Shown piece by piece: positions 3,582 through 30,370 of a stretch of 64,000 nt of DNA. Where the stretch lies: the IMG/VR virus record IMGVR_UViG_3300020473_000011, positions 217,558 through 281,557 of that record. One strand, 5' to 3'. Below the pieces are notes generated by a model. That model saw only the letters and a list, made by a program, of their open reading frames with translations. It was not told where the DNA came from and made no database searches. The translations under genes and the position numbers were made by a program. Every line of letters starts with the position of its first letter. The first letter of the stretch is position 1.

Positions 3582-3812
3582 ATGTCGAAAAGTAAGAAAA
3601 TGTCGGTCGATGCTGGCCGTGGGACTATTAATGACTGCGCCTTGGCAGCCCTTGTAACCAGTAAGGTTTTCCGTACTCAAGTTGTAAAAGCGAAGAAAGG
3701 GAAAGGCTCGTACAAGCGTAACGGAAAGCATAAGCTAAAAGCTTATCCAGTAGCTTCTTTAATTAAGAAGTTAGCGGATAGCCTTTTAGCGCGTATTTCA
3801 TTACTGCGATAA
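3582..3812 (+). CDS. arfA: Alternative ribosome-rescue factor A
   Basis: GTINDCALAALVTSKVFRTQVVKAKKGKGSYKRNGKH matches the ArfA signature (E. coli [37 protein letters not shown]). Confidence 0.88.
   Translation: MSKSKKMSVDAGRGTINDCALAALVTSKVFRTQVVKAKKGKGSYKRNGKHKLKAYPVASLIKKLADSLLARISLLR
3734..3790 (+). promoter_or_regulatory. Long in-frame hairpin in the arfA 3' end (candidate RNase III or termination site)
   Basis: GCTAAAAG..TATCC..TAGCTTCTT pairs with AAGAAGTTA..GGATA..CTTTTAGC; located just after the KGKGS...GKH codons. Confidence 0.7.
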
Positions 3813-5306: not shown

Positions 5307-5615
5307 CTAAATAAGGTTGCCCAAGTCGTCGACCATGTCGACAAAAGCTTCTAGCGGCTCTTCTGAGCGGTCTACAAAGGCTTTAAGATAAGCGTGATGC
5401 TTCTCTAGGCGCTCAACCTCATCTTTCGTCAGTTCTTGCTGGTTGTTTAGGTGATTACCTACACGGTCAAGCTCAGCTTTTACATCACGCATTAGGTTCG
5501 ACACCTCACGGTAATGCTTAAAGTGTTTGCGTTGGATGTCTTTTAGCTCATCCTTGCCAATGTTTGTTTGTACTGTGATTTTTGCTTCGTTTAATAGGCC
5601 AGCTGCGCGTGACAT
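5307..5615 (-). CDS. Hypothetical helical protein
   Basis: Likely start MSRAAGLLNEAK with GAGGA RBS. Confidence 0.65.
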   Translation of the reverse strand: MSRAAGLLNEAKITVQTNIGKDELKDIQRKHFKHYREVSNLMRDVKAELDRVGNHLNNQQELTKDEVERLEKHHAYLKAFVDRSEEPLEAFVDMVDDLGNLI

Positions 5616-5660
5616 GACGTTTTCCTCAATAGTTCGATTAGTTAACAGCCTAAAGAATAG

Positions 5661-5678
5661 CATCGTTGTACAATGATG
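5661..5678. promoter_or_regulatory. Palindromic operator-like site (example of ~29 copies)
   Basis: CATCGTTGTACAATGATG. Confidence 0.7.
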
Positions 5679-5873
5679 TTAAGGCACAAAAGCAACGTCG
5701 GCAGTTTTATCTTCATCGTCGACCAGTGGGACATCGTCTTTCAGGCAAAAACCGTAGTTGCCGTGATTCATAGTCAGGTGATAATCACCTTTCCCCTCAG
5801 CGCTTATTTCCTGCAACATCGCGATAGCTTCGTCCACCGTCATTATTTCTTCGTTTTTGTGAAGATAGGGCAT
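5679..5873 (-). CDS. Small acidic hypothetical protein
   Basis: 64-aa ORF with RBS, flanked by TTGTACAA sites. Confidence 0.55.
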   Translation of the reverse strand: MPYLHKNEEIMTVDEAIAMLQEISAEGKGDYHLTMNHGNYGFCLKDDVPLVDDEDKTADVAFVP

Positions 5874-6002
5874 TTGTTGTTTCCTTTAGGGTCTCGTCAT
5901 TATCACCGTTAGTGTTGCCCGCCAGTTTAGTTGGGATAAACCAGCTAGGCAACACTAATCGTTGTACAATGACTAGAGCGCGCCCCATCAGTGTTGACAG
6001 TT

Positions 6003-6112
6003 TTCTATGGGAATAAATATGGAAACCCTATTGTAATGGGCTTTATCGGGCGTTTTAGGCGTTTTCCATAGGTTTCCATAGAAATGTGTGGTTTTCGTCA
6101 GGATTTTCCATA
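6003..6112. repeat. TTTCCATA repeat cluster (inverted arrangement) downstream of the recombinase operon
   Basis: Minus-strand copies at 6003-6012 (variant) and 6018-6025; plus-strand copies at 6063, 6073, 6105. Confidence 0.75.
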
Positions 6113-6137
6113 AAAAAGCCAGTCGTTGTGACTGGCT
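6112..6137 (-). terminator. Terminator of the recombinase operon
   Basis: AAAAAAGCCAGTC-gttgt-GACTGGCT. Confidence 0.7.
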
Positions 6138-6322
6138 CGTTTACTATTGCTTTTTGGGCTGAGCTAACTTAACGGCTCGTTGTACAATCAAATCGGCTCT
6201 CGATGGGGTCACACCATTGGCTTCCTTTGGCTCTACGCCTTTTATGTGTGAATGACTATCTACCTCCAAGCTGATACCTGTTAGACTGTCTGTCACGTCG
6301 TAAATGCCCTTACTCATACTCT

Positions 6323-6754
6323 CTACCTCAAGGCTACTACATTAGCATGTCTCATCTGTGACTCTAGGTCTGACACCTGACGGCGGCTTACCCATAGCTG
6401 ATAGACTAGGTTAGCCTCGCGTGTCACTGACTTATCCAGTTCGGCTTTGTACTCGTCGCGCTCTTCGCGGTAGCGTTCCTTAGCGCCTTCCTGTTCCTTA
6501 ATATTACTACGATACTTCTCCTTTTGGGTAGGTGTGGCTTGCCCTGCTTTTTGTTTCGCAGCGTTCTTCAAGTCTTTTATACGCTGAATGACGCTAGGGT
6601 AGTGGTAAGCTGTACTTAGGCCAACGCCTGCTTCCTCTTCCACTGCCTTAGCCGATAGCTTCCGTTTAGCTTCCACGCGAATAGGCGTACCGCTCTGTAT
6701 GCGCGTAATCGCGTCAAATAGTTCTCTTTCAGTAGATTCACTCATCTTTACCAC
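6323..6754 (-). CDS. GinD/TnpC-like small HTH + coiled-coil protein
   Basis: LSAKAVEEEAGVGLSTAYHYP helix-turn-helix, then a charged coiled coil; last gene of the recombinase operon. Confidence 0.65.
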   Translation of the reverse strand: MVKMSESTERELFDAITRIQSGTPIRVEAKRKLSAKAVEEEAGVGLSTAYHYPSVIQRIKDLKNAAKQKAGQATPTQKEKYRSNIKEQEGAKERYREERDEYKAELDKSVTREANLVYQLWVSRRQVSDLESQMRHANVVALR

Positions 6755-6758
6755 CTAA

Positions 6759-8834
6759 TTAGTTCGTGAAAGGTTCAAAAGCTACGTTGGCTTTCTGTAG
6801 CATGTGTTCAATCATTTTGATCTGCATCGTGCCTGAGTACATGATCAAGTTACCGCCTGCAAAGTCTTCGGCATTCTTTTGGTCGTCACATAGCTCTTTA
6901 TGAAGGTCTAGTAACAGTTCGAAGCTTTCGTCAGTATAAATCTGGCTGTCGCAATCCATACAAAGAGCAGGGTTGCTCTCATTGTCCATGTTGCACTTGT
7001 AGCCGCTTGAGCAGTAGCCTGCACCTGCCGCATGAATGCTTATCTCGCCTTTCTTGATAAGCTTTTTCAGACCTTCCACTGACTGGTACATTTTGGGCAT
7101 TTTATCACGTGAAGCTACGATGGACTCGCCTTTTTTGCCGTACAAGGGCTTGTCTGTATTATACAAGTTGTCTGCAATTTTAGCCTGCATGTTCAAGCGT
7201 TCATCTAGGATTTGACTAATAAGCTCTAACTGCGACTTACTATCCTTATTCGCGTCAAAGAAACCCGCGAAGGCTGCGTGGTTTGCATAGTGACGCGACA
7301 TGTCTGCACAAAGATGTTTGAACTGTTGCTTTATGGCAGACACCGACGCTAAGTCATGGCGAACTGCAAATACAGCTAAGCTACGGCGCAGTTGATGTAG
7401 CGATAATTGCCATACACTACCAACGAGAATTGGGTCTGATGCCAAAGTTGGATTCAAACGCTTGTACTCTTCTACGTCATCAGCTGTAACGCGGTAGCCG
7501 CACGCGTCGCTCACTGCTTGTGTATACTGGCTATTGTGCGCAGGCAACTCTGTAGGCGGCACACCTGCCCGTTGATTCGCTACCCATAAATGGTCGCGTA
7601 GCGTTTCAATCTCCGCAGCTTTAGGGTGACCTTCATCAATGAATTTTTGGCAACGGCCTTGAATGGGCTTTGCTAAGATAGCCGCAGTTTCTATGGCCTT
7701 TTTAGTGATAGGCGCTGTCACCCAAACATCAGGCGTACCCTGATGTGAGTTAGACATCTTATGTGTTACCGACTTAATCAAAGGGACGTTTGTGTTGTTG
7801 TAATTTGCGATGTAGTAGCTGTCTGGTTTAATCTCATAGGCGTCACTACTGCGCATACCCGTATACGCCACACAGGCCACAAAACAAGTTACTTGCGCTC
7901 TGTTGTAAAGTACTGTGTAAGCACGGAATAACGCATTAGGTGCATTTATCGGTGCTGCAATAGCTTTTAGCTCTTCGTAAAGCTTTGTGCCTTTTAGACC
8001 GTCCTCAATGATAGCGCGTGATTCACGGGGTGTACGACTGTTAATTGCACGCGCCTTAACCTCGACCCCTTTTTCAATACAAGCAGTTACGCCCGCATCA
8101 TAATTCTGGTACAGTTCCGCTTGAACACGTGCTAGCACTGAGGCTTCTGCCCAGTAGCGTTCGATTGAATCGTCTAAGTGATTCAAAAGACTTGCGTAAA
8201 CGTTCGTAGGCAAGGCAGGGTACTGCCTAATTAGCTGCTTATCGTCTGCGCCAATTGCCTTGGCGCTCAACGGGTTTACACCTAGTGTTGGAACGCGAAA
8301 CGGTAATAAGCTCTCTAGGTTCTCTAGGTGCGATAACAGTGCGTTATAGCCACTTATTGATTGGGCTGATAAGTTCTTACTGGCCAAGTGTACTGCTAGG
8401 TTATCAAACACCTGCGTATTGCAAAGGGCTGCAAACGACGAGTGCTGTTCCTTGTCTAAGAAGGATGCCATGCTTTTAGCGTTAGAAAGCAGCCCTGAGA
8501 TAGAACCCGCTTTAAGCAGGCGCGTCGATCCCGCTGGTGCTCGAAGAAACGTGTAGATGATTGACTTAACTTCGGCTCTAAGTGCTGGGTTCTTAATCTT
8601 CTCAAAGCGAAAGATCAGCTTATTTCCATTTTTCAGCGATTTCTGCTGATTCAAGTCCCATATATCATCTGCAAACGTAACTACTTCGCCATTGGGGAAA
8701 GCGGCTACGGTGATGCTCTTTTGCTTGTCGTCACTCAGTGGGCTTTTTAGCTCACCAAGGTTGATAAAATCAACCTTGCCCTCAAAGACTACATTTGCGT
8801 CATCTGTGACGTGAAGCTGTGTGGCTGCACCCAT
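6759..8834 (-). CDS. Large tyrosine recombinase (GinC-like) with C-terminal Cys cluster
   Basis: YTGMRSSD, LHQLRRSLA, QFKHLCADMSRHYA; C-terminal YCSSGYKC...CMDC. Confidence 0.8.
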   Translation of the reverse strand: MGAATQLHVTDDANVVFEGKVDFINLGELKSPLSDDKQKSITVAAFPNGEVVTFADDIWDLNQQKSLKNGNKLIFRFEKIKNPALRAEVKSIIYTFLRAPAGSTRLLKAGSISGLLSNAKSMASFLDKEQHSSFAALCNTQVFDNLAVHLASKNLSAQSISGYNALLSHLENLESLLPFRVPTLGVNPLSAKAIGADDKQLIRQYPALPTNVYASLLNHLDDSIERYWAEASVLARVQAELYQNYDAGVTACIEKGVEVKARAINSRTPRESRAIIEDGLKGTKLYEELKAIAAPINAPNALFRAYTVLYNRAQVTCFVACVAYTGMRSSDAYEIKPDSYYIANYNNTNVPLIKSVTHKMSNSHQGTPDVWVTAPITKKAIETAAILAKPIQGRCQKFIDEGHPKAAEIETLRDHLWVANQRAGVPPTELPAHNSQYTQAVSDACGYRVTADDVEEYKRLNPTLASDPILVGSVWQLSLHQLRRSLAVFAVRHDLASVSAIKQQFKHLCADMSRHYANHAAFAGFFDANKDSKSQLELISQILDERLNMQAKIADNLYNTDKPLYGKKGESIVASRDKMPKMYQSVEGLKKLIKKGEISIHAAGAGYCSSGYKCNMDNESNPALCMDCDSQIYTDESFELLLDLHKELCDDQKNAEDFAGGNLIMYSGTMQIKMIEHMLQKANVAFEPFTN

Positions 8835-8835
8835 C

Positions 8836-10584
8836 CTATACCTCCAAACTTAGTGTAGATTTCGCGTAGGAACGCCAAAATTTGTGGATTCCTTCGCTGA
8901 ACAGCTTAGATTCTGCGGCTTTTACGTTATCTTTAACGAACAAAGCAAGCAGGCTCTCAATTCTTGCCAACAACTTACCCTTTGATTTCTCGAAGTGGTC
9001 GGCATCCTTGTACTTACTTGAAGACGCAAGAACGACTTCTTTGTAAGACAACAATTGGTAGGCATCGTCGATAGTGTCAACTAGCGCATAGTTGCTGCAC
9101 GTTAGGCAGCTATCAAACATCGTACACGGCATTTCCTCAGCACTGGCTAGACCAAGCTTCTCAAGGATAGGCGCATGTTTGCGTTGTGATTTAGTTGGGT
9201 TTGCACCCTCATACGGGTTAGAACAACGACCGCCCGATGGTACAGCCTCATTCTTTTTGTACTTCTGGTTTATGGCATCCAGCGGTAGTAGCTCAATACC
9301 AAGCTCGTCAGCAAGTTCTTGCTTGGCCTCGTCGACCGTCAAACCCTTACCGAGTTTACTTAATACTGTGATGGCTGCGTGTGACTGCTCGTAGTTCTCC
9401 GCTTCGTTACCACTGCCGAGGTAGTGCTCAACTGCGACGCCTGTTGAGTGCCCAGCGTCTTTTGCAGCGGCTACGATACCTGCTGCTCTGGTAGCTGTTT
9501 GGAAACGGTTTTTACGGAAGCGCTCGGCACTAAGCATTAGCTTGGAACCATCGTCAGCCTGTACCTTAAAATGTCTGAATAACATATCAGACACAGCGGT
9601 GATGAAGTTCATCACAGGCTGAACAATCTTGCCGTTGACTTGTAAGAAACTAAATAACTTCCCATCAGCTGCGGGATTATGCTTTGTATTCTCTAACAGT
9701 AGCTCTACCAGTGCTATCTCACGAGGTGTAGACATTAAGCGCGAAACATCATGGTTCGCACGTGCTTTATGCGCATTGATCTCATAGACTGTGCTCGACT
9801 TAGATTTTTTGCGCGTGATACAGTCAATTGTTAGGCTCTGCAATACAGCCGTATTTAGACCTGTGTATAGCGATAAGCGGAACATGCCTAGGGTACTTAA
9901 TAGCCACCAAGCTGTCCCTTTAGCCTCTGGTACGTTATAAGAAAAATTGCGGTCATTAGCCCTCAAACTAAACGTGCTACCGTTAGGGTTGGCTTTCAAT
10001 TGCTTAGACAGCTGGTCGTGCAAGTCACAAACCGCTTTCTTTAGGCAGCGTTGCTCGGTCTGAGAGTAAGCGCGGCGTACCTCACGACCACCACGTTTAA
10101 CAAAAGGCGGCGTGGCTCCTATGATCGGCTTAGGGTCAATACCCGCGACCACCAGTAGCTTCTTGTAAGCTGACCAGTCCCCCCATGCGGTTGATTGCTT
10201 GTAGCGTACCCGAGGGTCACGTACTTTTTGAGTCCAGTACTCAATGACCGCGTTACCACCTTCTGGTGAATCTAGGCTTACTTCTAATTCGTCACTTAGG
10301 GCTGTGAGTTTGCACCAGCGCTTATACGTTGACTTAATAGTGCTTGCGCTATTTGTCGCTGTCGTAACCCATTCCCATAATGCGTTAACGATGTGCTGGC
10401 GTGCTGGCACAAGCTCAGCATGCACGTCGCAATTTAGATGGTAAAGATGTGATACAGCCACTTCGTAATTTTCCCCGCTTGGAAGCGTTACCTTACGCGA
10501 TTGTGCGTGCATTGGTAAAGCCAGCGCTGTAGGCTTACTCGGGGCTTTTAAACTTGATGCACGTGATCGACTAATTCTTCGCAT
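8836..10584 (-). CDS. Degenerate tyrosine-recombinase-fold protein (GinB-like)
   Basis: YTGLNTAVL (catalytic R replaced by N), ERFRKN, AGHSTGVAVEHYL; C-terminal GGRC...CTMFDSCLTC. Confidence 0.7.
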   Translation of the reverse strand: MRRISRSRASSLKAPSKPTALALPMHAQSRKVTLPSGENYEVAVSHLYHLNCDVHAELVPARQHIVNALWEWVTTATNSASTIKSTYKRWCKLTALSDELEVSLDSPEGGNAVIEYWTQKVRDPRVRYKQSTAWGDWSAYKKLLVVAGIDPKPIIGATPPFVKRGGREVRRAYSQTEQRCLKKAVCDLHDQLSKQLKANPNGSTFSLRANDRNFSYNVPEAKGTAWWLLSTLGMFRLSLYTGLNTAVLQSLTIDCITRKKSKSSTVYEINAHKARANHDVSRLMSTPREIALVELLLENTKHNPAADGKLFSFLQVNGKIVQPVMNFITAVSDMLFRHFKVQADDGSKLMLSAERFRKNRFQTATRAAGIVAAAKDAGHSTGVAVEHYLGSGNEAENYEQSHAAITVLSKLGKGLTVDEAKQELADELGIELLPLDAINQKYKKNEAVPSGGRCSNPYEGANPTKSQRKHAPILEKLGLASAEEMPCTMFDSCLTCSNYALVDTIDDAYQLLSYKEVVLASSSKYKDADHFEKSKGKLLARIESLLALFVKDNVKAAESKLFSEGIHKFWRSYAKSTLSLEV

Positions 10585-11842
10585 GACCTTCCCCTAGTAA
10601 AGCTATTTCAAGTTCACGGTCACGAGCCTCAGCGATGTATCGTGCTGCGTCGTTACCATTTACGAAGTCTAGGTAGTCCATTAAGGTTTTAACGTCCTCG
10701 TGACCCATCCAGCGCTGTAGAACACTAAGCGCACTGCCACTGTTCATTGTTTCCAATAGCTCAGATAGGCGGTGTGTTGCATACGTCGAGCGTAAATCGT
10801 GGAATGAATACTCGAATGGGTTTGAGGTTTCGGCGCGTATCAGGTCAACCACGCGACGAAAGCCTTTGTACGCAGCTGACTGACCGAAGCCTAGACCTTT
10901 CTGAGTAATGAATAATGGTATGTTACCGCCGTCAAACGCGTCGCTTGCTTCAAATAGCGCACGGCGCTTCTTGTGTTTCTCTGATGAGCGGTAATCTAAA
11001 AGTTTGTTGTTTAACCAGTCAGGCATTTCGATTGGGCGGTCTTTGTTGCCCTTAGTTTCGTTACCACCTGTACTTAAACCAATCCAGACTTCGTTACCAC
11101 CTGATAGCTTAGCGTCGACTAATTTCTCTGTGTACGTAGCAACTTCGGTAATACGCATGCCTGTAAACAACGACAGCTGAACCATCAATTGAGTTTCTTC
11201 GTTTGCACGTACTAGGTAATCCCCCAATAAGCGTAGGTCTGACAAGGTTAAAGGACGTAGCACACGACCCCCTTGTTTCTTACCACCGACAATACGTAGG
11301 TCAGTACTATCAACCACAATTTTCTTAGTGGCCATCGTATCGCTTTTAAGGTTGTGGGTGAGTGATTCACAGCGGAATGGGGCGCGGCGTTGGTCATATT
11401 CGAATACGCCCTCATACAGCGCCCATTTGTAAAAACTCACGACAACATTCATGTAGCTTTTAGCTGTAGACGCAGCTAACGTACCGCCATCAACGGCAGC
11501 TTGCAGCGTATCTCTGAAAACGTAAGTAGGGCGCGTAGACGGCGTCGTACCAAACGTAAACCAATCAAAGTTGTTAATCTCTAAGAATCGGCAGTAGAAG
11601 AGTAAAGCTGTAGCTGTACTAGATAAACTCTTTAGGTTCTTACGCAGCTTACGGTCGAAGAAGTACATCACCGCCTCTTGAACGATTTCACCTTCTCCAT
11701 TGAATAAAACTGGGAACCTATCAATCGTACGTGATACCTCATCGCTGAACACGGCCAACAGTTCGCCAGCGTCTTCTGTGATCTCAACCGATTTATGCAA
11801 CGGCATATCGGTAATCCAATGTAGGTAAGCTTCTTGTGTCAT
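10571..11842 (-). CDS. Tyrosine recombinase/integrase (GinA-like)
   Basis: FTGMRITEV, TKGNKDR, FHDLRSTYA, WMGHEDVKTLMDYL: complete R-K-H-R-H-Y set. Confidence 0.92.
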   Translation of the reverse strand: MTQEAYLHWITDMPLHKSVEITEDAGELLAVFSDEVSRTIDRFPVLFNGEGEIVQEAVMYFFDRKLRKNLKSLSSTATALLFYCRFLEINNFDWFTFGTTPSTRPTYVFRDTLQAAVDGGTLAASTAKSYMNVVVSFYKWALYEGVFEYDQRRAPFRCESLTHNLKSDTMATKKIVVDSTDLRIVGGKKQGGRVLRPLTLSDLRLLGDYLVRANEETQLMVQLSLFTGMRITEVATYTEKLVDAKLSGGNEVWIGLSTGGNETKGNKDRPIEMPDWLNNKLLDYRSSEKHKKRRALFEASDAFDGGNIPLFITQKGLGFGQSAAYKGFRRVVDLIRAETSNPFEYSFHDLRSTYATHRLSELLETMNSGSALSVLQRWMGHEDVKTLMDYLDFVNGNDAARYIAEARDRELEIALLGEGHAKN

Positions 11843-12966
11843 ACTACTGCTGCCTTTTTAAAGTCGTCTAGTGTCCAAGTATCAAAGTAGCCTTCGTTAC
11901 CGTCACCCTCACAGGCCGCATAGGCCATCTGGCCGTAGCCATAACAGTTGAACTCACAATTAACGAGGTCGGCACTATCGGCAAGGTCAGTGTGTGTTTT
12001 ACGGTCGTATTCTTCCATGCCCATTGCTTGGATGGGGCACTCTTCGTCACAGCCTTCTGGCGTTATTAAATGGTTATCTTTTACGTAGGTTTCCATGACG
12101 CGTTGCGTGGCGTCGCCGAAGACTCCCGCTACGAACTCTTCGCGCGTTTCAGTACGCATACCGCTGCCTGATTCAAAGGTTGGAACGTCTAAGCCTGTGT
12201 TAGATTCGAAGAACTCAAGGTACGTCGTTATGTTGTCTTTTAGCGGCTCACCTGTACGCTTGGCGTAAGTCGATTTGTCGTAACCTGTGTCACGAAAGTC
12301 GCTCTCTACGTACTCAGCGCCTGACCATTCTTTAATAACGGCGAGTATAAATTTTTGACGGAAGCCGTCTTTGTTTTCGGGATCGACGTACTTAGTAAGG
12401 ATTGCGTGCAGCTCGTCGAAATGGTCTGCCGTGACTTCAATAGGCTGCTCACTTGCTGCTTGAAAGTCGTTGAATGTCCAGTCTTGAAAGTCAGCATTCT
12501 CAACAAAGCTATCCCGTAGGGCAGTGCCTAGTTGCGTGTAGCCCACAAAAATTGACTCTAACGCTAATTCTTCGGCATCTGTTTCAGCTTCGGCTCCCAT
12601 AATGTACTTGTGAGCTTCTTCGTGATTTAAAGGACGCTTTTTGTCGTATGACATGCCCAAAAAGTTTTTACGCACATAGTGCTGAACAAAGCTACTCGTT
12701 AGTGAATGTAGGAACTGGTAGACCGCCTCGTCGTAGCGTAGGTACTGACGGCATAGGTCTGTGAGATATACGTCGGGACGTACGTCACTTTCCATTAAGC
12801 ATAGTTCTTTGAATGTCGTAGCATCGTCGGCATCTGGCCATACTTCTGTAACGTAGCTAACAAACTTTTGGAATGCGAAGCCTTTCTTACCTGTTTCGTA
12901 AAACTTAGCTAGTCCAGCTTCTATCTTTTCTAAATCTTCTAACGTAACGACTCTTAACGTGGTCAT
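11839..12966 (-). CDS. Acidic hypothetical protein (375 aa) coupled to the integrase
   Basis: ATGA overlap with the integrase start; AGGA-free but clean long ORF. Confidence 0.7.
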   Translation of the reverse strand: MTTLRVVTLEDLEKIEAGLAKFYETGKKGFAFQKFVSYVTEVWPDADDATTFKELCLMESDVRPDVYLTDLCRQYLRYDEAVYQFLHSLTSSFVQHYVRKNFLGMSYDKKRPLNHEEAHKYIMGAEAETDAEELALESIFVGYTQLGTALRDSFVENADFQDWTFNDFQAASEQPIEVTADHFDELHAILTKYVDPENKDGFRQKFILAVIKEWSGAEYVESDFRDTGYDKSTYAKRTGEPLKDNITTYLEFFESNTGLDVPTFESGSGMRTETREEFVAGVFGDATQRVMETYVKDNHLITPEGCDEECPIQAMGMEEYDRKTHTDLADSADLVNCEFNCYGYGQMAYAACEGDGNEGYFDTWTLDDFKKAAVV

Positions 12967-13002
12967 AGGAATACTCTAAAGCTACATCAATAACTTTATT
13001 AT

Positions 13003-13051
13003 ATTCCATACTTTCCATAATTACAATAAGGCTACATTACTTTCCATAGAA
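13003..13051 (+). repeat. TTTCCATA repeat cluster upstream of the recombinase operon
   Basis: ATTCCATA 13003, TTTCCATA 13012, ATTACAATA 13020, TTTCCATAGAA 13041. Confidence 0.7.
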
Positions 13052-16000
13052 TTAGGCTAGGTTACCCCATATAACGTACCCGTATTCGGTATCTCCCAGC
13101 GTATAACGGCGATATAGCCAGCTACCGTCATCAGGGTCTCTGTACAGGATAGGCTCAACCACACCGTTTCGTATTGCCTCGATCATAGCTGCACGTGGTG
13201 AGTAAGTTCCTCGTGCTGTTCCGTTTTGCACTTTCTCGATCAACTCTTCACGGTACTTAGTACGCAAGTCACGTAACCACTGCATCAGGTCAATCTGAAC
13301 GATACCTGCCTTATAGCGTCGGAAGTCCTCACTTCGGAACTTAATAGGCAAGTTAACATCAACCCTGTCATGGAACGGCAATGGCTTCATAAGTGAGTAG
13401 TCGATGCTATCAAGCACAGTGGCCATATCAACAGCATACTCTACAAACAGGTCATCAGACTTAGCCACGGCCGCTTGCTTATAGCGGTCAATAATATCGA
13501 ACGTTGGAAGAATATTACCGACTAGCTTCGCGTAGTCAGCCGTGTCCATCGGCTTCATCATACGGTAGTGCATGTTCGCAACAGGGTCACTGAGCAGGTA
13601 CTGCTCGTAAGCTTGGCCAACGGCATTCACCATATCTTGGTAACTCGCGTACTTAGAGTGCAGCACGCCACCTGCTTCGGCACCTGTTGCCTGTGCGTAC
13701 GCTTCATCAATACGCGCGTCACTCAAGCCCATTGCCTTCAATGAACTGTAGAGCGAAGCAAGACCTTGCTCGTACTGCTCGTACAGACGGTCTAAGCGTT
13801 TTGCACTCACAGACTCTTGGTCATACTCGTCGTACAACGCAGTGTCACCTAGGTTAGACTGATCGAACTTATTGTAGCTCTCCGTGTCGCCTAGCCCTGC
13901 TTGTGCTACATCGGCGAATAGCTCGCCTTGCCCTAGCTGATACTGTTTCAGGCGCATGTAGTGTGCCTTTGACACCTCTTTTGCTTGTGCAAAGAACATA
14001 TCAGCTTGTGTAACGCTTAACCCAGCTTGCAGTAGTGCATTGTAGATTTCAGGCGCAACCAAGTCAGACTGTACTAGCTTGTTGTAAATAGCGCTGTCGC
14101 TTTCCAGTGATTGCTTGTAGCTCTGGTATGAGTCTGTTGTCTCTGCCAGCGCTTGACGCATAGCATGGTAGAACTCCGTCATACTCTCAGGCTTTTGTGC
14201 ATACCACTGATTACCAAACCAGTTCTCGCGCATGACCTTAACGACCTCGTCGTGCTCTTTCTCAGACAAGGCGACCTTTTGTTGTTTGAAGTCCCAGTGG
14301 TCGATAGCCACTTCGGTCAAGTTTGCGACCCACTTCTGGTATAGCTGACTTTCGCTCGGCGCAGCAAGTCTCTCAAAATCAAGACTATCAGCCAGCTTTG
14401 TGATCGTCTTGCGTAGCACAATCTCAATCTTCTTCGCGATACTCGACACATTCTGTGGATTAATACGCTTCATATCTGTAATGCGTATATCCGACGATGA
14501 TACCTTGTCCCGCAACCCGATTGGTCGGTCGTTCAACAGACTGTAGCCACGGCCATCACGTCGCATCGCTATCCAAAAGTCGGTCGACACTATATCGCGT
14601 ATTGGTACATACGCCTTGTTGGCTGCATGACCCAGTGGCACACCCACTGGGAGTGATAAGCTATAGGCCGTTGACGTTGGACGTACATGCGGTGTAAAGC
14701 GCTTTTTAATGTCCGTCTTTGTCGCCATTTCTGACGTCAGTGTTTGATAGAACTTAGTGTGTGTTGCGTAACGGCTTTCACTTAGCTGGTGGTAGCCCGT
14801 ACCACTAAATACTTCGCTGTAGTTGTCCAGCTGTTCAAAATGGATCGCGTTAGAGAATACGTCGAACGGTGACCACTTCGTGTAGGTCACATCAGCATTA
14901 ACATACTCTGACTCTATGCGGATAAAATCTTTATTCACGTAGTCATGCGCTTGTGCATTACGCAAGCGTATTACATCGGTAATTTTCACGTCTGGACGCG
15001 TCCGTACATCTTGGTCATACCGACGGTTCACGTCGACAGCTGAGACCTCAAGCTGCACCGAGTGGATAATACGACTTAACGTATGTTGGTCGTAGCGCTG
15101 TGTCCATTTTGGTAAACGGTAGTTCTCCACAAATGTTCGGGTAGGGATGACCCAGCGGTCAGTCTCAACCGTAACAGGTATACGTTGACCCATCGCACTT
15201 TGTTTGTACAGTACGGATGAACCCACGCCTTTTATTTGGTCGAGCATCTTAACCCACGCACTACCTACAATGCTGATTGATGGCGCTGTCGGCATCATAA
15301 CTTGATGGTAGCGTGCGCCCTGCATCATTGGTGCCGCATGCTGCTGAGGTTTGACCCATTGCTCACCCGTCATACGCACAGCTGTGCTGGTGGTCGGATT
15401 AACCTGCTTAGTCAGAATATCTTGTGACAAACTCAATGAGTCCGTTTTCTTCTTGATAAGCTCAAGCTCTTGGGTTCCCATTATCTGGTCTGTACTTGCA
15501 CGGTACGGCGACTGTATATGACTGCGCCCTAAGCTCTGCGAGATATGACCGTAGTCTTGCAACCAGTTCGGCAGCCCATAAGGGAACGTATGGCGGAATT
15601 TAGGGAACCAGTACTCAGCCTTTTGAGACAGCGTACTTCTAAAGCCCGTCAGTGAATCGAACTTAACTTCTTGTAGGTTAAGACTCGCCTTAGCAACTTT
15701 CATTTCAATACTTTTCAGACGCATAGAGTCTGCTTGCGACCACGGGGTCAGCTCTATTCGCTGAGTTACATAGCGCGTCAGTGCCTTTCGGCCATTGATG
15801 AGCTGTAGTGACCCCGATACATGGAAATCACTCTTAGTCATCGTCAGTGCAAACGGCTGGAACTTCGACATGTATGTCGTGCTCATGAATTTACCGTCAC
15901 GTGGCTTATAACCCTTCACGGTCTTAACGCGCATGTGTCGCCCAAGTGCATCAGTCACACTCGGGATCTTCATGTGCTTGTAATGCTCCGTCGTTGCTTT

Positions 16001-19000
16001 CTCCATCTGAGCACCTGCCATCGCTAAGTGGAAGTCCGTTGCTTTTGCAAGGTCAACCGCTGCAAACTTTGGATTAAACCCACGCAGTACTTCAAGTGCT
16101 ACATCAGTCAGGACAGGATTCTCGGCATAGCCTTCCTTCACGGCCATCGTTTCGTGCAAGTTGATCAGGGGCTGCATTACTTTTGAGTGTGCGTCGGCTA
16201 AGCGTATCGTCGTTCCAAACACTTCACTTGTCGTGTCAATTTTTGGCACGTTGTCCATCGTGATCTTAATCAATTCGACGGCAGTCTCCATCGTGTTGAT
16301 TTGCAGCTTAGTGCCCGTAACATCAGCTAAATACTTAGCCCAGCGCATAACAACCGACTCGACATGCTTCATTGCAAGGCTGTGCGGTTCCATCACAAGC
16401 ATAGCAACGTCGTTCATGATGGCATTGTATGAGGTTTCCGATTGCATTAGCACATCATTCATCGCCTTGATTTGACTACCTGCAATATTAAAGTTAGCCA
16501 CTTCTGGTAACTGCTCTACAAAGTTGTCCATCAGCCTCATGTGAGTTGTTTGAAGTCCTGCTATCTCCATTGAAGACTCTTTACTCAGCGTCACCTTATT
16601 TTGCAGCGCACGTTGTGCAAGTCTATTTAGTAATACAGCCTGTTCAAGTATAGTAAGAGCATCTTGGTTTTGGTAGTTAACGCCAATTTCTTTCGTGAGC
16701 TGACGGTCGCGAACAAGCAGCAAGCGCTCGCCTAAGTGTGCTGCATAGCTCGTTAGGCTCGCCAGCGACACATTGTTTAGCTCTGTACGAATGTGACCAC
16801 CACGCGTTAGTTTTGCACTGCCCTGTAGCTCAGTTGTTTTGACTGTGCTTAACGGCAAACCATCCTCATAATGCGTCTGGCCACCTGCAACGCGTGTGTA
16901 CAACAAGCCATCGGCCGTCGTGTCTTGTGACATTACGACGGTAGACGCGACGCCGTGCTCAATCGCTTGTCGTAGCGTCTGGTACTCGACAGTTGTCTCG
17001 ACTAAATTTGACGCATAGTCAGTGCCTGCCACGACTGAGGCATCGCTACTTAGGCGCGACGTACGCTGAACGGCCGAAGTTTCAATACGGTCTACCCAAT
17101 AGCGCACCGATGGCTCTGACGTTAGTGTGACCGCCTTAACGTGTTTACGGTTAAGGTCATGACCTTGACGGTGATAGATGTCCTGCTGTGTGCTACTAAG
17201 TTTAGACGTAACCAGCTGTGTACCAACTTGCACATTAGTCCATGATGCTTTCGTAAATGGCAGCTCTTCGCGGTGTGCTGATATTGAATCGGCCGTAACC
17301 AGCTTAATTAGCTCATCAATCGTAATACCGACTTTATCTAGCTTGAAGTTAACTAAGTCAGAGAGCACGCGGCTATTCTTGTCGACCTTAGTGAAGACAC
17401 CTTTTGGTATGGCTTTCAGTTGGCTAAACGCCCAATCGACTAGATTAGACTTTACAGCTTTAAGCCAGTCATTCGTATTGTAGGCGACTGCCTCAGCCTC
17501 AATATTGCTAACAGCATCGCGGCCAATCAGCACCGCATTTATCTGTGTTGAGGTATTTGATTTAGTCTCAAAATCAACACCATTCAATACACGCGTAATC
17601 CCTGAGTCTATGGCTAGTTGGGCACTGTCCATTAAAGTTGTGGATGCGTGCAGGGCAGTGTCTAGTGTCTGTGTGTTCTTTGGCGAAATTGCTTGCGAGC
17701 GTATCAGTTTCACAAGGTCTTGGTAGTACGTTGACCCCGAAATCACGTCCATACCCACAGGTTGTGGGAACATCGGCACGCCAGCTCTTTGAACATCAAA
17801 GTTACTTGCTGTTAGTGAATAGTTCTCGACCTCTATGATACGCAGGTCTACCTTGTTCTCTACGCGGGTGAATGGCTGTAGCGTGAACGCCTGACCCTTA
17901 ACAAGTTCAGCACCTGTCTTAGCGCCACGCGCCACAAGCGTTGACGACTTACTCGTGCCTAGGAAGCCCTGCACGCGCAGTGGTACCGTGCTAAAGCGGT
18001 TAATGGAAGTCTGCGCCATGTAGTATTCTAGAACGCTCTCAGCCTCACTACGGGCTTCGGTAAGGCGCAGAGGAACCACATTAAGTGACACCTTCGTTTC
18101 ACCCATAGCAAAAGGTACTGCGTCCATAAAGCCACTACGGCTCTTTTCAACAGTGAACGTTAAGCGGTCAGTCCTTGTGCTCATACCACTGACTTTATGC
18201 AGTTGCAGCGTATTCTCTTTGGTTGACGCTTTGTGCTTCCCGAATGGGATCAGGCGTGCTTCACTTGAGAACAGATAGCCCATCTTATTTAGGTCTATCG
18301 TTGTGGCGAACTTCTTAATCGTGTGGTTAACGTAACCTAGCCCTTTTGCTTGCGCTAAGGTTGAGCGGTGTACACGGCTGGGTATTTTTAACCCATCGCT
18401 ATAATTCCACGCCGATCCTGATTGCATTTCAAAGGGTACAACCTGTGCTTGTGCTACACGATTGCCCGTGCCCACATCAAACGCTGCGCGCTGCCACTTG
18501 TAGGCTGCATCACGGAAAAGTCGCAGGGCGACTGTCGAGATAAAACCGCTTTGACTGTTCAGTGTAAAGGTGACATCGTCGTCAGCGACTGACGACCGAG
18601 CTAACGCATTGTATAACAGCTCAATTGTGCTTGAGAATGCGTTACTCTCGCGTGCATCATAGCTTACCGTTTCAGGTAGACTGCTTGTAAGGTACGCTGC
18701 CGTTAAAAACTTGACTAGTTCCGCCGCAGGGACATCCTGATCGTCTCTAACGAGATTGATTATGTCTGTCCCAGCGGTGCTCAAGCGTGACATTAAGTAG
18801 CTCACGTCCTCGGCACTATCAGACGACAACAATGCCCGTGTGAAGCGTACTTTATCGACCCCCGAGTCAATTGACCAATTGCTCAGTACTTCGTAAAAAA
18901 GCTCAGCTACGTCACTTGTTCCTTTTGCTTGAGAAAAGACCAGCTTTTGTGCAGCTGGCATATTGCCGCCATTATCCAGACGGGTATTAATCCCCACCAC

Positions 19001-22000
19001 ATCATTTGAGGTGCCCACAGGCTTAGGCACTAGCGGATCAGTCGGTGCTGATGTTCGTGGTGCATTACGGCCATTCATAGGGTCGGCCGCCGCAGAGGTC
19101 GGAAACCCTCTGTTAGCCAGTATCGCATCGGCCATCGACGCTGTTGTGCTGCCTACTAAGTTGAAATTGAAGGATAGCGGGGCTTCCATCATGATGCGGT
19201 CAAGCGCATAACGTATAGCATACTTTAGCTCTTGTAATGCGTTTTGATTCGTCACTATATAGCGTAGTGTGTCGGCTATATGCGATTTAGTAGCACTTAC
19301 CTTGAAGAGCTGAACCAAGTGGTTTGACGCATGAAGCGACAAGGCACTTGTTGGCGCATAGCCAAGTGCGTCGGGTGCCGTGAAAGTATAGAGCTGCACA
19401 GGGTACGCCAGCATAGGCTCCGCGTATTGCATGCCACGACCTGTCACCGTCATGTTAACGTGCTTAGCGTCTCTCATGCGGTTAGCCGTCACTTGTAGGG
19501 CACTCATCGGCGCGCCTACCTTTGAGGTTAGGTGGCTTAGCTCTGCCATGGTCAGCTTTGTCGAGGCAAATGCGCGGTTGCTTTCTACGTACGAAGCTAA
19601 CCAGCGGTCTATTTTATCTTTCCCAGACCAGACACTACGTGTGGCATACGTACTATCAAAACCAGCTAGCGGTGCTTTAACACGCCATGATTTAATAACT
19701 TGTGAAAGTCCCAGTCTGTTCGTCTTAGTGAATGCCGAGCGTAGAGCCTCTAGCACGGTTTCCCCATGCGAAGAGGCTGACGAGGTGCCCTTTGTATCAC
19801 CTTGAAAGTCTGAACTACGGTGGAGTGATGCAAGCACTGTGTCATACCCCATCGCGATATGACGGCGAGCATGCGTGTAGTACTGCTGGTCGTAACCTAA
19901 TACCTCTTTTCGCTGGTATTGGCCAGCCACAAAAAGGCCATCAAAGGCTTGAAAGGGTACCTGATAGCGAATACCCCTCATATCTTCGTCAGCAATAGAG
20001 ATTGCACGCTTATCGCCTGTGAATAAAGCTGCTTGAGTCATGCTCTTTCGTGACGGGTAGGCCGCGCCGTATGACGCATTAGCACCCTCGTGGATAGACC
20101 TCGATACAAACGTAAAAGTCCATGTCTTGTAGGCAAGTCTACCCGCCAGCGTATTCAGTCCAATAAAGTACTGAACATCCGAATACGTCATCACGTTATG
20201 ATAAGTACGTGATGCAATTGTTCGATTGGTTTCACCGTTAGACAGTGCGCGACTGTAGTCAATATCTTGTGAAAAGCTGGTGCCTCGTTGCATTCCCTCA
20301 GAGTTAAGTAACTGGCGCTGAGCCGAGCGACTGTAGAGCATCATCATGCGCATGAACGGATCAGCCGTTGCTGCTTGCGTACCATGTATACCTGTTTTTG
20401 TGCTGTAACCCGAACGTGAAGTAAATTGACGCGCTAGGTAGGCGTGAGCCGTGTTTGCCCAGTTCCGAATGCTTGTCTGCTGGATCTCAAACTTAAAGTT
20501 ACCCACGGACAAGTCAACGTTCGACCTTAATAGCTTGTAGGACGCATCCATCGTGCGCACTGTTACGGTACTACCCAAGGCGTAGTTATGTTTGTTCGCA
20601 TGGTGTGCTGAACTACTTTGCATTACACGTGCTGAGTTATCATTTGTTTCATGGGATGTCTGGTAAAGGCCAACCATTGCATTTGTGTTCGTACTCGCAC
20701 GCGTAGACGGGGCGGAGATACCCACACGTTGAGGCTTAGCCTTGTAGTTGTCCCAAAAACCAGTCGTTAGCCTGACGTGGCGAACTTGGTCAACAGCGAA
20801 GCTTGGGATCTCAGGCGTCTTGTTCAAATCAGACGTCGACAGGTAGCATCGTATTTGATAACCCGTAAGTGTTCCATCTGCTGGTAACTGCTGTGGCTCG
20901 TTAGAGTATTCGGTGTACTTAGTTGTTAAAGACGATTGGTCACGATACTGTAGGCGGAACTCCGTAAGTACCGAGGTGCCCGTCGGTATGACTGAATACA
21001 ACGACGGTTCAACGCTCTGAATAACACGAAGAGACTCTACCTTAATGACATCAGATTCAAAGCTACCCACCCAGAAGCCACTCGCTTCCACAGGGTCTGA
21101 TAGAAATAGGCGCTTTTGGCCATCGCTATCATACTGGAAGTCTGTGCCTTTCATTTCACCGTGAATGTCATCATGTAACGCTACTTCATCAACAGGCTCG
21201 TAGACTTCGACTCGGCTCCTGAAATGAAGGCCATCCATCACGTTGTACTGACGCTCAAGTCGCAATTCTTCATCAGTTACCCATGCAACCTGCGTGCTTG
21301 ACTCCGTACCTTCGCTATCGGTAACAACCAATGTGCTGCCGTCACTAACAACCAATAATGGGTCACCGTCATGCCCTAGTGAAAAAGATTGGCTCTCGTA
21401 GTGCTCGCCCACAAGGCAATCACTAACACTCGGTAGATTAAAATAATCCGCCTTTTCTTCAAATAATATAACGGTCTCTGGTTGCTCACTATTAACTGCA
21501 CCGTTAGTCTTCTCAATAGACTGGATGACCGTTGAGACCTCTGCACCATCAGGCTCGCTGATGGCGACCATCGTCACGACATAATTACCATGCCATGTGC
21601 TGTAGTAACCTTTGCGCTGCACGACGATTGGGTCTTCGTTTAGGGTCTCTGATTCTACGCTGTATAAATCAACAAGTAGCGAGCTGGCAAGGTCTAAGCA
21701 GTAAACTTCACCCGTAACCCGTGCCGAGAAAACAACTAAAGAATTGTGAGCGTAAGCATGACCCACCTCGAAAGGAAGGGGCACCTCTTCAACGGTAAAC
21801 TCGTCAAATGAAATAAAGTAAACAGCCGTCGTTGATACCGCAACAATGCTACGAGAATAACCAAGCCACATTACGTGGTTTATATCGGCAACACCCTCTA
21901 CGTAACGAAATGGCGCAAAGACAAGGCAGCCATCAGGATCTTGCTGTACATAGAATACATCAATATGATTGCGAGTATTTCCTACCACCCACAACAGGTC

Positions 22001-23817: not shown

Positions 23818-23831
23818 TGTCTCACCTCAAC

Positions 23832-25748: not shown

Positions 25749-25936
25749 TGCTCATTTCCTCGTTACTTTAGTCTCAGCACCATTGATACGGCGATACTGC
25801 AATCTCAGGTGTAGTTATGATTGTACAACGGATGTGCAGGCGTTGTACAACGGAGACTATAAAAAACTTACAAGAAGCAACCTAGGGAAAAACTGCACAC
25901 TAGGCCACTTCGTCAATTAATACCTTAAAACGTTCT

Positions 25937-27283: not shown

Positions 27284-27297
27284 TAGTCAGCCCCTTC

Positions 27298-28638: not shown

Positions 28639-28720
28639 AAGTTGTTAACTCCGTCACATCGGCAGCCATTGCTGCGATTAAAAGCCCAGTTACATGTCCG
28701 CGACGAGCGCGGTCTAGCAC

Positions 28721-28732
28721 CATTGTACAATG
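28721..28732. promoter_or_regulatory. Palindromic operator-like site
   Basis: Perfect CATTGTACAATG, paired with a second core at 28757. Confidence 0.7.
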
Positions 28733-28776
28733 AATGTGCAGAGTATTACAGTTTCATTGTACAACCATTGATGCCG

Positions 28777-29673: not shown

Positions 29674-29681
29674 GCTCTGCC

Positions 29682-30338: not shown

Positions 30339-30370
30339 TATCACAGTCTCACTTTAGTTGTTGTTTAAGG

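What the first reader, a model, noticed from the sequence alone, without database searches (positions are those of the whole stretch)
6003..13051. TTTCCATA repeat clusters bracket the recombinase operon
Seen: left cluster has two minus-strand copies facing three plus-strand copies around a central segment (TTCTATGG 6003 / CCATAGAA 6076; TATGGAAAC 6018 / GTTTCCATA 6072). Right cluster has three plus-strand copies ending 1 nt from the giant-gene stop. Both clusters also contain ATTACAATA (6029-6037 minus, 13020-13028 plus) and the CCATAGAA extension. Inference: arm-type recombinase binding sites marking element ends or an attP; an iteron-like origin is an alternative.
Basis: partly seen in the sequence, partly recalled or inferred. 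Interest (0 to 1): 0.65.

Follow-up and report, generated by a model that had tools for sequence, protein, structure and literature searches.

The report
Integrative element ends inside jumbo phage
The two repeat clusters are most likely the left and right ends of a 7-kb "SE"-type mobile element (two active tyrosine recombinases, one inactive recombinase-fold protein and a small helper protein) sitting inside a roughly 420-kb marine phage genome, a carrier not found for this element family in the collections searched.

Summary
TATGGAAA/TTTCCATA occurs 9 times in the window against 1.6 expected. In the 281-kb record it forms only three clusters, and two of them bracket the operon.

[quoted passage not shown] Each protein matches its positional counterpart in published SEs, at 24-35% identity to the nearest modules.

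The outermost copies (TTCTATGGRAA at 6003 and 13051) head imperfect terminal inverted repeats, 15 of 20 bases identical. They correspond to the family's C/C' termini (TACYATG...).

The inner copies match a subterminal motif, T[AC]TGGAAA, found at both ends of bacterial relatives:
- 34 of 46 loci carry it in one orientation just upstream of intA.
- The three SE papers checked do not mention it.

"Element ends" is therefore supported. "attP" and "iteron origin" are not. Binding is inferred, not shown, and no empty site was found.

Three points are new: the carrier is a jumbo phage, an orphan gene precedes intA, and this lineage has no relative above about 31% identity over full length.

The parts
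6003..13051 (-). Candidate SE-family element, 7,049 bp, with its genes on the - strand
   Evidence: Bounded by the terminal inverted repeats. It contains the intA-tfp-intB-srap module. The sequence and context are identical on 7 contigs, the longest 419.5 kb.
13020..13051 (-). C end (intA-proximal terminus): terminal imperfect inverted repeat. Read inward it is TTCTATGGAAAG...TATTGTAAT.
   Evidence: 15 of 20 bases match the other end. The gapped 32/35-nt alignment scores 25, and 4 of 1000 shuffles reach that. It lines up with the family terminus TAC[CT]ATG, which lies about 100 nt upstream of the first gene in relatives.
13003..13019 (-). Two subterminal motif copies at the C end: TATGGAAA at 13012-13019 and TATGGAAT at 13003-13010. 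Both point inward.
   Evidence: The equivalent forward copies occur in 34 of 46 bacterial SE loci.
12998..13026 (-). Sigma-70-like promoter for the operon: TTGTAA, 17 nt, TATAAT. The two motif copies sit in its spacer.
   Evidence: Best promoter-like site in 5600-13400, with 10 of 12 matches. Consensus match only; function is not shown.
11839..12966 (-). P0001, 375 aa: orphan first gene of the operon. It is built of two tandem repeats of about 190 aa, and its stop overlaps the intA start by 4 nt.
   Evidence: No family hit. No homologue in the 5.8-billion-protein word search apart from itself. No homologue in any of 80 bacterial SE loci. Internal repeat seen (D6).
10571..11842 (-). intA, 423 aa: ordinary tyrosine recombinase
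   Evidence: Pfam Phage_integrase 7e-11. 31-32% identical to IntA of the Shewanella and Alteromonas SEs, E 2e-49. R, K, H-x-x-R, H and Y are conserved.
8836..10584 (-). tfp, 582 aa: tyrosine-recombinase-fold protein lacking the first catalytic arginine
   Evidence: Matches Tfp of SEs at 24%, E 3e-22. The Arg-I position is Asn (N244) in all 21 aligned Tfp sequences. The AlphaFold model (pLDDT 71) has XerA, Cre, XerH and lambda Int as best PDB matches, E 2e-6, probability 1.00.
6759..8834 (-). intB, 691 aa: large tyrosine recombinase
   Evidence: 30% identical to the Shewanella IntB, E 2e-74. G-x-R, K, H-x-x-R-R, K-H and Y are conserved, together with a C-terminal Cys cluster.
6323..6754 (-). 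srap, 140-143 aa: small auxiliary protein
   Evidence: 28-35% identical to Srap of four SEs, E 1e-11 to 2e-13. The N-terminal KLS.KAVEEEAGLG block is conserved. Weak coiled-coil type hit in Pfam.
6144..6317 (-). Small ORF of 57 aa between srap and the terminator
   Evidence: Called as a gene on the 419-kb contig. Translation. Function unknown.
6116..6138 (-). Intrinsic-terminator-like hairpin ending the operon. Its T tail runs into the innermost motif copy.
   Evidence: 9-pair stem with tail TTTTATGGAA.
6063..6112 (+). Three inner motif copies of the C' end, at 6063-6070, 6073-6083 and 6105-6112. They are oriented opposite to the two outer copies.
   Evidence: The same layout, with outer copies facing inner inverted copies, occurs in the Citrobacter, Shewanella and V. 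pectenicida SEs. It also appears as a stereotyped (+,+,-) cluster in 20 of 80 loci.
6003..6037 (+). C' end (intA-distal terminus): terminal imperfect inverted repeat. Read inward it is TTCTATGGGAAT..TATGGAAA..TATTGTAAT.
   Evidence: As single-stranded DNA, 5997-6116 folds into a long imperfect hairpin, -13.5 kcal/mol, z -2.2.
13052..22378 (-). Flank: giant phage ORF of 3,108 aa. Its stop codon abuts the C end.
   Evidence: No family hit. Five tail-sheath-like paralogues lie upstream of it.

Best explanation

Shown:
- The operon is an SE core (intA, tfp, intB, srap) preceded by an orphan gene.
- The outermost repeat copy at each side heads an imperfect terminal inverted repeat that corresponds to the family's C and C' termini.
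- The inner copies correspond to a subterminal motif, T[AC]TGGAAA, whose position and orientation are conserved at both ends of related bacterial SEs.

Inferred:
- IntA and IntB cut and join at the termini, as published for SEs, where attL x attR recombination yields a circular copy.
- The repeated motif is bound by an element protein. Srap, Tfp or the N-terminal part of IntA are the candidates.
- This binding would assemble the two unlike ends into one complex.
- At the C end the copies lie inside the operon's promoter, so the same binding would also throttle the operon.
For: Family membership:
- One-to-one protein matches to four plasmid SE modules. The Tfp or Srap accessions of three of them (L009, L010, L022) appear in the published SE ortholog tables.
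- IntA and IntB keep the catalytic residues; Tfp lacks Arg-I.
- The Tfp model matches Xer, Cre and lambda Int structures.

Termini:
- The two ends are 15 of 20 identical, and the inverted alignment is reached by 4 of 1000 shuffles.
- Published termini and those extracted here begin TAC[CT]ATG about 100 nt before the first gene. Ours begin TTCTATG 85 nt before the first gene.

Motif:
- Of 44 forward copies in the 450 nt upstream of intA across 46 loci, 42 fall in one 50-nt window. 34 of the 46 loci have at least one. The background rate is 0.18 per kb.
- The C' ends of the Shewanella, Citrobacter and V. pectenicida SEs carry 2-3 copies in both orientations.
- 20 of 80 loci show the (+,+,-) distal cluster.

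Operon signals: the promoter overlaps the copies, and a terminator closes the operon.

Phage context:
- Tail-sheath paralogues, an SLT lysozyme, a DNA polymerase and a helicase lie around the element.
- There is distant similarity to Erwinia and Pseudomonas jumbo phages.
- The context is the same on 7 contigs of up to 419.5 kb.
Against: - Insertion and activity are therefore inferred from anatomy only.
- The element's G+C and tetranucleotide composition are indistinguishable from the phage's, so there is no compositional sign of recent arrival.
- An extra gene between the C end and intA was not seen in any relative examined.
- The terminal heptamer differs from the family consensus at position 2 (TTC against TAC).
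- No binding data exist for the motif.
- The profile comparison of Tfp with IntA was inconclusive.
Confidence: 0.78

Rival explanations
1. The module has been domesticated as the phage's own lysogeny or integration system. The clusters would act as an attP-like region that integrates the whole phage genome.
For: The element's composition equals the phage's. It is fixed in all 7 contigs. The lineage has no relative above about 31% identity. The orphan first gene is unique to it.
Against: Both termini tightly flank the operon in the inverted arrangement of a cargo-free SE. An attP needs only one site. The phage has a separate, conventional 343-aa tyrosine recombinase elsewhere.
Confidence: 0.1
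2. The repeats are only transcriptional operators. A regulator such as Srap would control the operon and the downstream gene, with no role in recombination.
For: Two copies lie in the spacer of the best promoter-like site. The left cluster lies between the operon's terminator and the next gene.
Against: The motif recurs at the distal C' ends of relatives, 9-17 kb from the operon promoter and next to the mapped termini. The outermost copies form the terminal inverted repeat. This role can coexist with the main explanation.
Confidence: 0.07
3. The inverted repeats bracket an invertible segment: a recombinase-driven switch that flips the operon region.
For: The terminal repeats are in inverted orientation, about 7 kb apart.
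Against: All 7 contigs show one orientation. Published family members excise as circles from such inverted termini (PMC9345347, PMC10214605). No outward promoter and gene pair that inversion would switch was seen.
Confidence: 0.03
4. The clusters are an iteron-type replication origin, or a chance clustering.
For: Short direct repeats about 10 bp apart (6063/6073 and 13003/13012) resemble iterons.
Against: No initiator gene lies in or beside the region. The motif is conserved at SE ends in chromosomes and plasmids. Shuffles exclude chance.
Confidence: 0.02

Closest known systems
Strand-biased circularizing integrative elements (SE-6283, SE-6945 and 35 others; Nonaka/Idola/Yano, PMC9345347 and PMC10214605)
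   Same: - Same four core genes in the same order, at one end of the element.
- IntA and IntB are catalytically complete; Tfp has the recombinase fold without Arg-I; Srap is small.
- The termini are imperfect inverted repeats of about 20 bp.
- The size is like the cargo-free SE-AmaTe101 (6,353 bp) and SE-6945 (7,171 bp).
- Insertion is at the very 3' end of a gene.
   Different: - It sits in a jumbo phage genome rather than a gammaproteobacterial chromosome or plasmid.
- Its proteins are only 24-35% identical to the nearest members.
- It has an extra orphan gene between the C end and intA.
- The termini begin TTCTATG, not TACYATG.
- The motif variant is TATGGAAA throughout, not TCTGGAAA.
- The target is not gor.
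- Circularization and strand bias were not tested.
The gor-targeting SE clade, e.g. on Shewanella pSX1_LC6, Citrobacter pPSV and V. pectenicida pLMG19642-1, and in 34 genome loci
   Same: The end architecture is the same. At the C end, the terminus is followed by 1-2 inward-pointing T[AC]TGGAAA copies. At the C' end, one outer copy faces 1-2 (occasionally more) inverted inner copies.
   Different: - Those elements sit at the 3' end of glutathione reductase, and the gene's last codons and stop lie inside the SE terminus.
- They carry 4-12 kb of cargo, often defence or toxin genes.
- Ours has more copies (3 at C, 5 at C').
GInt genomic islands (ginABCD; Bardaji 2017, PMC5385486)
   Same: A four-gene operon of three recombinase-type proteins plus a small helper, all needed for excision. 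The element is non-conjugative.
   Different: In GInts the degenerate recombinase is the third gene; here it is the second. According to PMC10214605, GInt and SE proteins form separate clusters. GInt ends are direct imperfect repeats.
Tn554 (tnpA, tnpB, tnpC)
   Same: [quoted passage not shown] Site-specific insertion with imperfect inverted ends.
   Different: Tn554 has no Tfp counterpart and occurs in Firmicutes.
Lambda-type attP with arm-type sites
   Same: Several accessory sites in both orientations flank the crossover sites and differ between the two sides.
   Different: In lambda the arm-site sequence is unrelated to the core sites and is read by a dedicated Int N-domain. Here the terminal copy and the inner copies share one motif, and the binding protein is unknown.

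Membership tests
SE (strand-biased circularizing integrative element) | Four co-oriented core genes in the order intA-tfp-intB-srap at one end of the element | tested here: met
   One-to-one blastp matches to four plasmid modules. The Tfp or Srap accessions of three of those modules are listed as SE orthologs. 31 of 80 genome loci match all four proteins.
SE (strand-biased circularizing integrative element) | IntA and IntB carry the R-H-R-Y catalytic set | tested here: met
   Invariant G-x-R, K, H-x-x-R, H and Y columns include our proteins.
SE (strand-biased circularizing integrative element) | Tfp has a tyrosine-recombinase fold but lacks catalytic residues | tested here: met
   The Arg-I position is Asn in 21 of 21 sequences. 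The model's best PDB matches are XerA, Cre, XerH and lambda Int, E 2e-6. hhalign against IntA was inconclusive.
SE (strand-biased circularizing integrative element) | Small Srap protein with a C-terminal coiled coil | tested here: met
   28-35% identity to four Srap proteins. Conserved N-terminal block. Only a weak coiled-coil type Pfam hit.
SE (strand-biased circularizing integrative element) | Imperfect terminal inverted repeats C/C' of 13-20 bp | tested here: met
   15 of 20 bases identical. The alignment starts at the last base before the giant gene's stop, and 4 of 1000 shuffles reach its score.
SE (strand-biased circularizing integrative element) | attL x attR recombination gives a circular copy, with strand bias and without an empty donor site | not testable with these tools
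No junction or empty site in contig collections.
SE (strand-biased circularizing integrative element) | Site-specific insertion shown by comparing attL, attR and attB | tested here: inconclusive
   No related phage without the element was found. Abutting a gene's stop codon parallels the gor-targeting relatives.
SE (strand-biased circularizing integrative element) | Resident on gammaproteobacterial chromosomes or plasmids (the reported host range; typical rather than defining) | tested here: not met
   The carrier is a virus record with tail-sheath, SLT, polymerase and helicase genes.
GInt | Order ginA, ginB (both catalytic), ginC (lacks Arg-I), ginD | tested here: not met
   The Arg-I-less protein is the second gene, and the third is catalytically complete.
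Tn554 family | Three genes tnpA-tnpB-tnpC with no recombinase-fold pseudo-enzyme | tested here: not met
   A Tfp gene lies between the two recombinases.
RIT (recombinase in trio) | Three tyrosine recombinases flanked by long inverted repeats (feature list recalled from memory and from the mention in PMC10214605) | tested here: not met
   One of the three lacks Arg-I and a fourth small gene is present. The inverted repeat is only about 32-35 bp.
Lambda-type arm sites | Accessory sites with a sequence distinct from the core sites, bound by the Int N-terminal domain | tested here: inconclusive
   The inner and terminal copies share one motif. The binding protein was not tested.
Iteron replication origin | Repeats next to an initiator gene | tested here: not met
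   No replication initiator among the ORFs between or beside the clusters.

The most novel reading that the evidence does not exclude
An intact, active SE rides inside a jumbo phage genome of about 420 kb. That would give this 'non-mobilizable' element family a virion route between cells.

The conserved but unequal sets of T[AC]TGGAAA sites at its two ends would be the so far undescribed accessory sites that make the ends functionally different. The C end carries inward-pointing direct copies only. The C' end carries facing copies that can fold into a hairpin. This asymmetry could underlie the family's strand-biased circularization.
Probability: 0.35. Interest if true: 0.75.

Novelty: new variant of a known kind. 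Interest (0 to 1): 0.6.

Why it matters
[quoted passage not shown] They are described as lacking any transfer system of their own, and how they move between cells is open.

An SE integrated in a phage genome would be a direct vehicle. This differs from the jumbo-phage transduction of islands reported in 2025 (PMC12595487).

Separately, the conserved subterminal motif gives the published 20-bp termini a wider and asymmetric context. That makes two questions directly testable:
- which of the four proteins reads the ends;
- why one strand is preferred.

Tried and rejected
Looking for relatives and an empty site:
- Near-identity DNA searches of 5500-13500 against plasmids and phages found nothing.
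- The single-protein IntB scan of viral contigs found nothing. The profile scan of IMG/VR with the IntB alignment also found nothing.
- Giant-gene tail and SLT scans looked for syntenic phages. Only unrelated SLT hits came back, with no synteny.
- The word-index protein search for IntB gave one weak hit.
- The empty-site pattern (left flank, 0-30 nt, right flank) had no match in viral or metagenome contigs.
- The right-flank 32-mer found only the same contig, CETM01183118.1, which is 100% identical.

Other negative results:
- Rfam found nothing in 5500-13500. There are no tRNAs in the window.
- Composition gives no sign of foreign origin.
- The published coordinates for SE-Pda04Ya311 did not show clear C/C' motifs in the pAQU1 record, so that element was not used for end comparison.
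- Ends of the Alteromonas pAMEDUM8_300 and V. parahaemolyticus pHLA elements could not be located on the distal side.
- hhalign of Tfp against IntA gave probability 2%, which is inconclusive. PDB sequence search with Tfp found nothing.
- The protein-atlas search for P0001 gave only sub-threshold leads.
- No second SE module exists in the 281-kb record.

Full report
**1. Observation**

The stated strings are at the stated coordinates.

TTTCCATA occurs 9 times in the window against 1.59 +/- 1.27 in shuffles, and no shuffle reached 9. The window is the last 64 kb of a 281,557-bp virus record. In that record, places with at least two TTCCATA copies within 150 bp number only three:
- the two clusters of the finding;
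- a pair inside a long ORF at G000 195216, taken as chance.

ATTACAATA occurs three times in the record, and two of those are in the clusters.

Written in the sense of the operon (minus strand) the motif is TATGGAAA. Eight copies exist: five on the left and three on the right. Two are imperfect, TATGGGAA and TATGGAAT.

**2. What lies between the clusters**

All genes between the clusters are on the minus strand and abut or overlap:
- P0001, 375 aa;
- a 423-aa Pfam-positive integrase;
- a 582-aa protein;
- a 691-aa protein;
- a 143-aa protein;
- a 57-aa ORF.

The best sigma-70-like site of the region (TTGTAA, 17 nt, TATAAT; 13026 to 12998) lies inside the right cluster. A terminator-like hairpin (6138 to 6116) lies at the inner edge of the left cluster.

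**3. Identity of the operon**

tblastn of the 691-aa and 582-aa proteins against plasmids found adjacent homologues in Alteromonas, Shewanella, Vibrio and enterobacterial plasmids. The annotated regions show the same four sizes in the same order, about 400, 570, 690 and 140 aa.

blastp gives one-to-one matches:

| Protein | Best identity | E-value |
|---|---|---|
| IntA | 32% | 2e-49 |
| Tfp | 24% | 3e-22 |
| IntB | 30% | 2e-74 |
| Srap | 35% | 2e-13 |

[quoted passage not shown] One module is the named SE-Pda04Ya311.

The papers define SEs by three things:
- the genes intA, tfp, intB and srap;
- imperfect terminal inverted repeats C and C' of 13-20 bp;
- circularization without an empty donor site.

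Alignments show that IntA and IntB keep the catalytic residues. Tfp has Asn where the first arginine should be, in all 21 sequences.

A model of our Tfp (pLDDT 71) matches XerA, Cre, XerH and lambda Int over about 350 columns, E 2e-6. A profile comparison with IntA was inconclusive.

GInts have the degenerate recombinase in third place, and Tn554 lacks it. The module is therefore SE-type, not GInt or Tn554.

**4. The clusters are the element's ends**

Published termini, read inward, begin TACCATG or TACTATG. The same start lies about 100 nt upstream of intA in five plasmid modules and in 34 genome loci.

Our two ends begin TTCTATGG at 13051 (read leftwards) and at 6003 (read rightwards). They are 15 of 20 identical. 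The Shewanella element is also 15 of 20, and two others are 9-11 of 20.

A gapped alignment of 32/35 nt, which includes the shared TATTGTAAT, scores 25 against 16.5 +/- 2.2 in shuffles. Four of 1000 shuffles reach it.

The distance from the C end to the first start codon is 85 nt. The element so defined is 7,049 bp. Published cargo-free or near cargo-free SEs are 6,353 and 7,171 bp.

**5. The inner copies**

In the relatives the motif T[AC]TGGAAA is a fixed part of both ends.

*C end (intA-proximal)*
- Inward-pointing copies lie at +18 and +48 in Shewanella, +47 in Citrobacter and +49 in V. pectenicida.
- Ours lie at +4, +33 and +42.

*C' end (intA-distal)*
- One outer copy in the symmetric orientation lies at +18 to +29.
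- One or two inner copies in the opposite orientation lie at +64 to +124.
- Ours has outer copies at +4 and +16 and inner copies at +61, +71 and +103.

The Citrobacter C' terminus found this way closely resembles the published C' of SE-EasCA1043.

Across 46 bacterial loci, 42 of 44 forward copies in the 450 nt upstream of intA fall in one 50-nt window. 34 loci have at least one copy. The background is 0.18 per kb on both strands.

Twenty of 80 loci show a distal (+,+,-) cluster with spacings of about 61 and 35 nt within the 10 kb fetched.

The 2023 SE paper has no occurrence of 'arm', 'subterminal', 'direct repeat' or 'binding site'. The 2022 paper reports no further motif in attL or attR of SE-6945. 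As far as these texts go, the motif is undescribed.

**6. Mechanism**

Shown: the gene content, catalytic residues, terminal repeats, conserved motif architecture, and the promoter-like and terminator-like sites.

Inferred from the SE literature: IntA and IntB recombine the two ends into a circular copy, and Tfp and Srap are required helpers.

Inferred here: the motif copies are binding sites for one of these proteins. They would make the two ends structurally different, and at the C end they would couple end-binding to repression of the operon.

As single-stranded DNA the C' region folds into a long imperfect hairpin (z -2.2). The C end does not (z -1.2). This is a lead on strand bias, not evidence.

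**7. Carrier**

The flanks are phage DNA:
- five tail-sheath-like paralogues and a 3,108-aa ORF on one side;
- small genes and an SLT lysozyme on the other;
- a DNA polymerase, a helicase and a tRNA nucleotidyltransferase further on.

Tail-sheath similarity points to jumbo phages of Erwinia, Dickeya, Pseudomonas and Yersinia at 26-28% identity.

The same protein set in the same order is on 7 contigs, the longest 419,531 bp, with the element in mid-genome. The sequence is 100% identical to the window. Another copy is the contig CETM01183118.1.

**8. How unusual**

- Tfp has no tblastn match in 50,697 phage records. IntB has two weak partial matches.
- One of those lies in a four-gene module at the edge of a third-party Pseudomonas prophage record. 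Its type was not determined.
- A profile scan of IMG/VR found no IntB relative apart from the record itself, which is left out.
- An exhaustive search of 1.84 billion representatives gave 758 hits. No non-self full-length protein exceeded 31% identity. The two best hits sit in ordinary four-gene modules.
- P0001 has no relative anywhere.

The bacterial relatives sit at the 3' end of glutathione reductase, whose last codons and stop lie within the SE terminus. Ours abuts the stop codon of the giant phage gene. The habit is the same but the target differs.

**9. Limits**

- Composition does not mark the element as foreign.
- Insertion, activity and protein binding therefore remain inferences.

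**10. Verdict**

The 'element ends' reading is supported. The 'attP' and 'iteron' readings are not.

The thing is a divergent member of a known family in a new kind of carrier, with an end architecture that the family shares but that the three SE papers checked do not describe.

Noticed in passing
window 11839-12966 (-): P0001 is an orphan made of two tandem repeats of about 190 aa; both end in a D/F-x-D/T-W-T-x-x-D-F motif. It is the first gene of the SE operon, and its stop overlaps the intA start. No homologue in any search, and the Atlas model is poor (pLDDT 0.53).
   Followed up: partly
window 13052-22378 (-): A giant 3,108-aa ORF with no Pfam or PHROG hit. Its last 800 aa have no tblastn match in GenBank phages.
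   Followed up: partly
window 22597-31450 (-): Five consecutive paralogues all hit the same tail-sheath family (phrog_12249, E 5e-38 to 3e-59). That is an unusual multiplication of a sheath-like gene.
   Followed up: no
window about 3582-3812 (+) (L034 19155-19385): A 76-aa gene with a precomputed Pfam ArfA hit (alternative ribosome-rescue factor A), carried by the phage.
   Followed up: no
G000:C1:60691-61722 (-) and 6553-8454 (+): The phage has a separate conventional tyrosine recombinase (343 aa, Phage_integrase E 1e-29) and a 633-aa ORF with a weak integrase-domain hit. Neither belongs to a second SE module.
   Followed up: partly
L038 5418-6848 and 33 other genome loci (L040-L093): A large clade of bacterial SEs sits at the 3' end of gor (glutathione-disulfide reductase). 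The conserved flank is ..GAAGARTTYGT. The gene's last two codons and its stop codon lie inside the SE terminus.
   Followed up: partly
L035 (BK061480.1 48745-53985): A Pseudomonas prophage record holds a four-gene module of 376/563/637/171 aa (three 'integrases' plus a TetR-like protein) next to a prophage integrase fragment. It could be an SE or GInt caught in a prophage prediction.
   Followed up: no
L010 2700-2900: In a V. alfacsensis plasmid, an SE's C end lies directly beside a sequence resembling the C' end of SE-6945. That sequence has three direct TTAGAT copies and one inverted copy. This suggests tandem SEs, and that other SE clades have their own subterminal repeat motif.
   Followed up: partly
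window 5903-5962: A 10-bp inverted repeat (TAGTGTTGCC ... GGCAACACTA) with a 28-nt loop lies in the phage flank just outside the C' end. A TTGACA hexamer at 5994-5999 lies 3 nt from the terminus.
   Followed up: no
Cargo of relatives (L032, L031, L037, L022): SE cargo in the relatives examined is rich in defence and toxin genes: SIR2, AbiH, PIN, TrlF-like ATPase, DEAD helicase, and RHS/SpvB-TcaC. The phage-borne element carries none of these.
   Followed up: no
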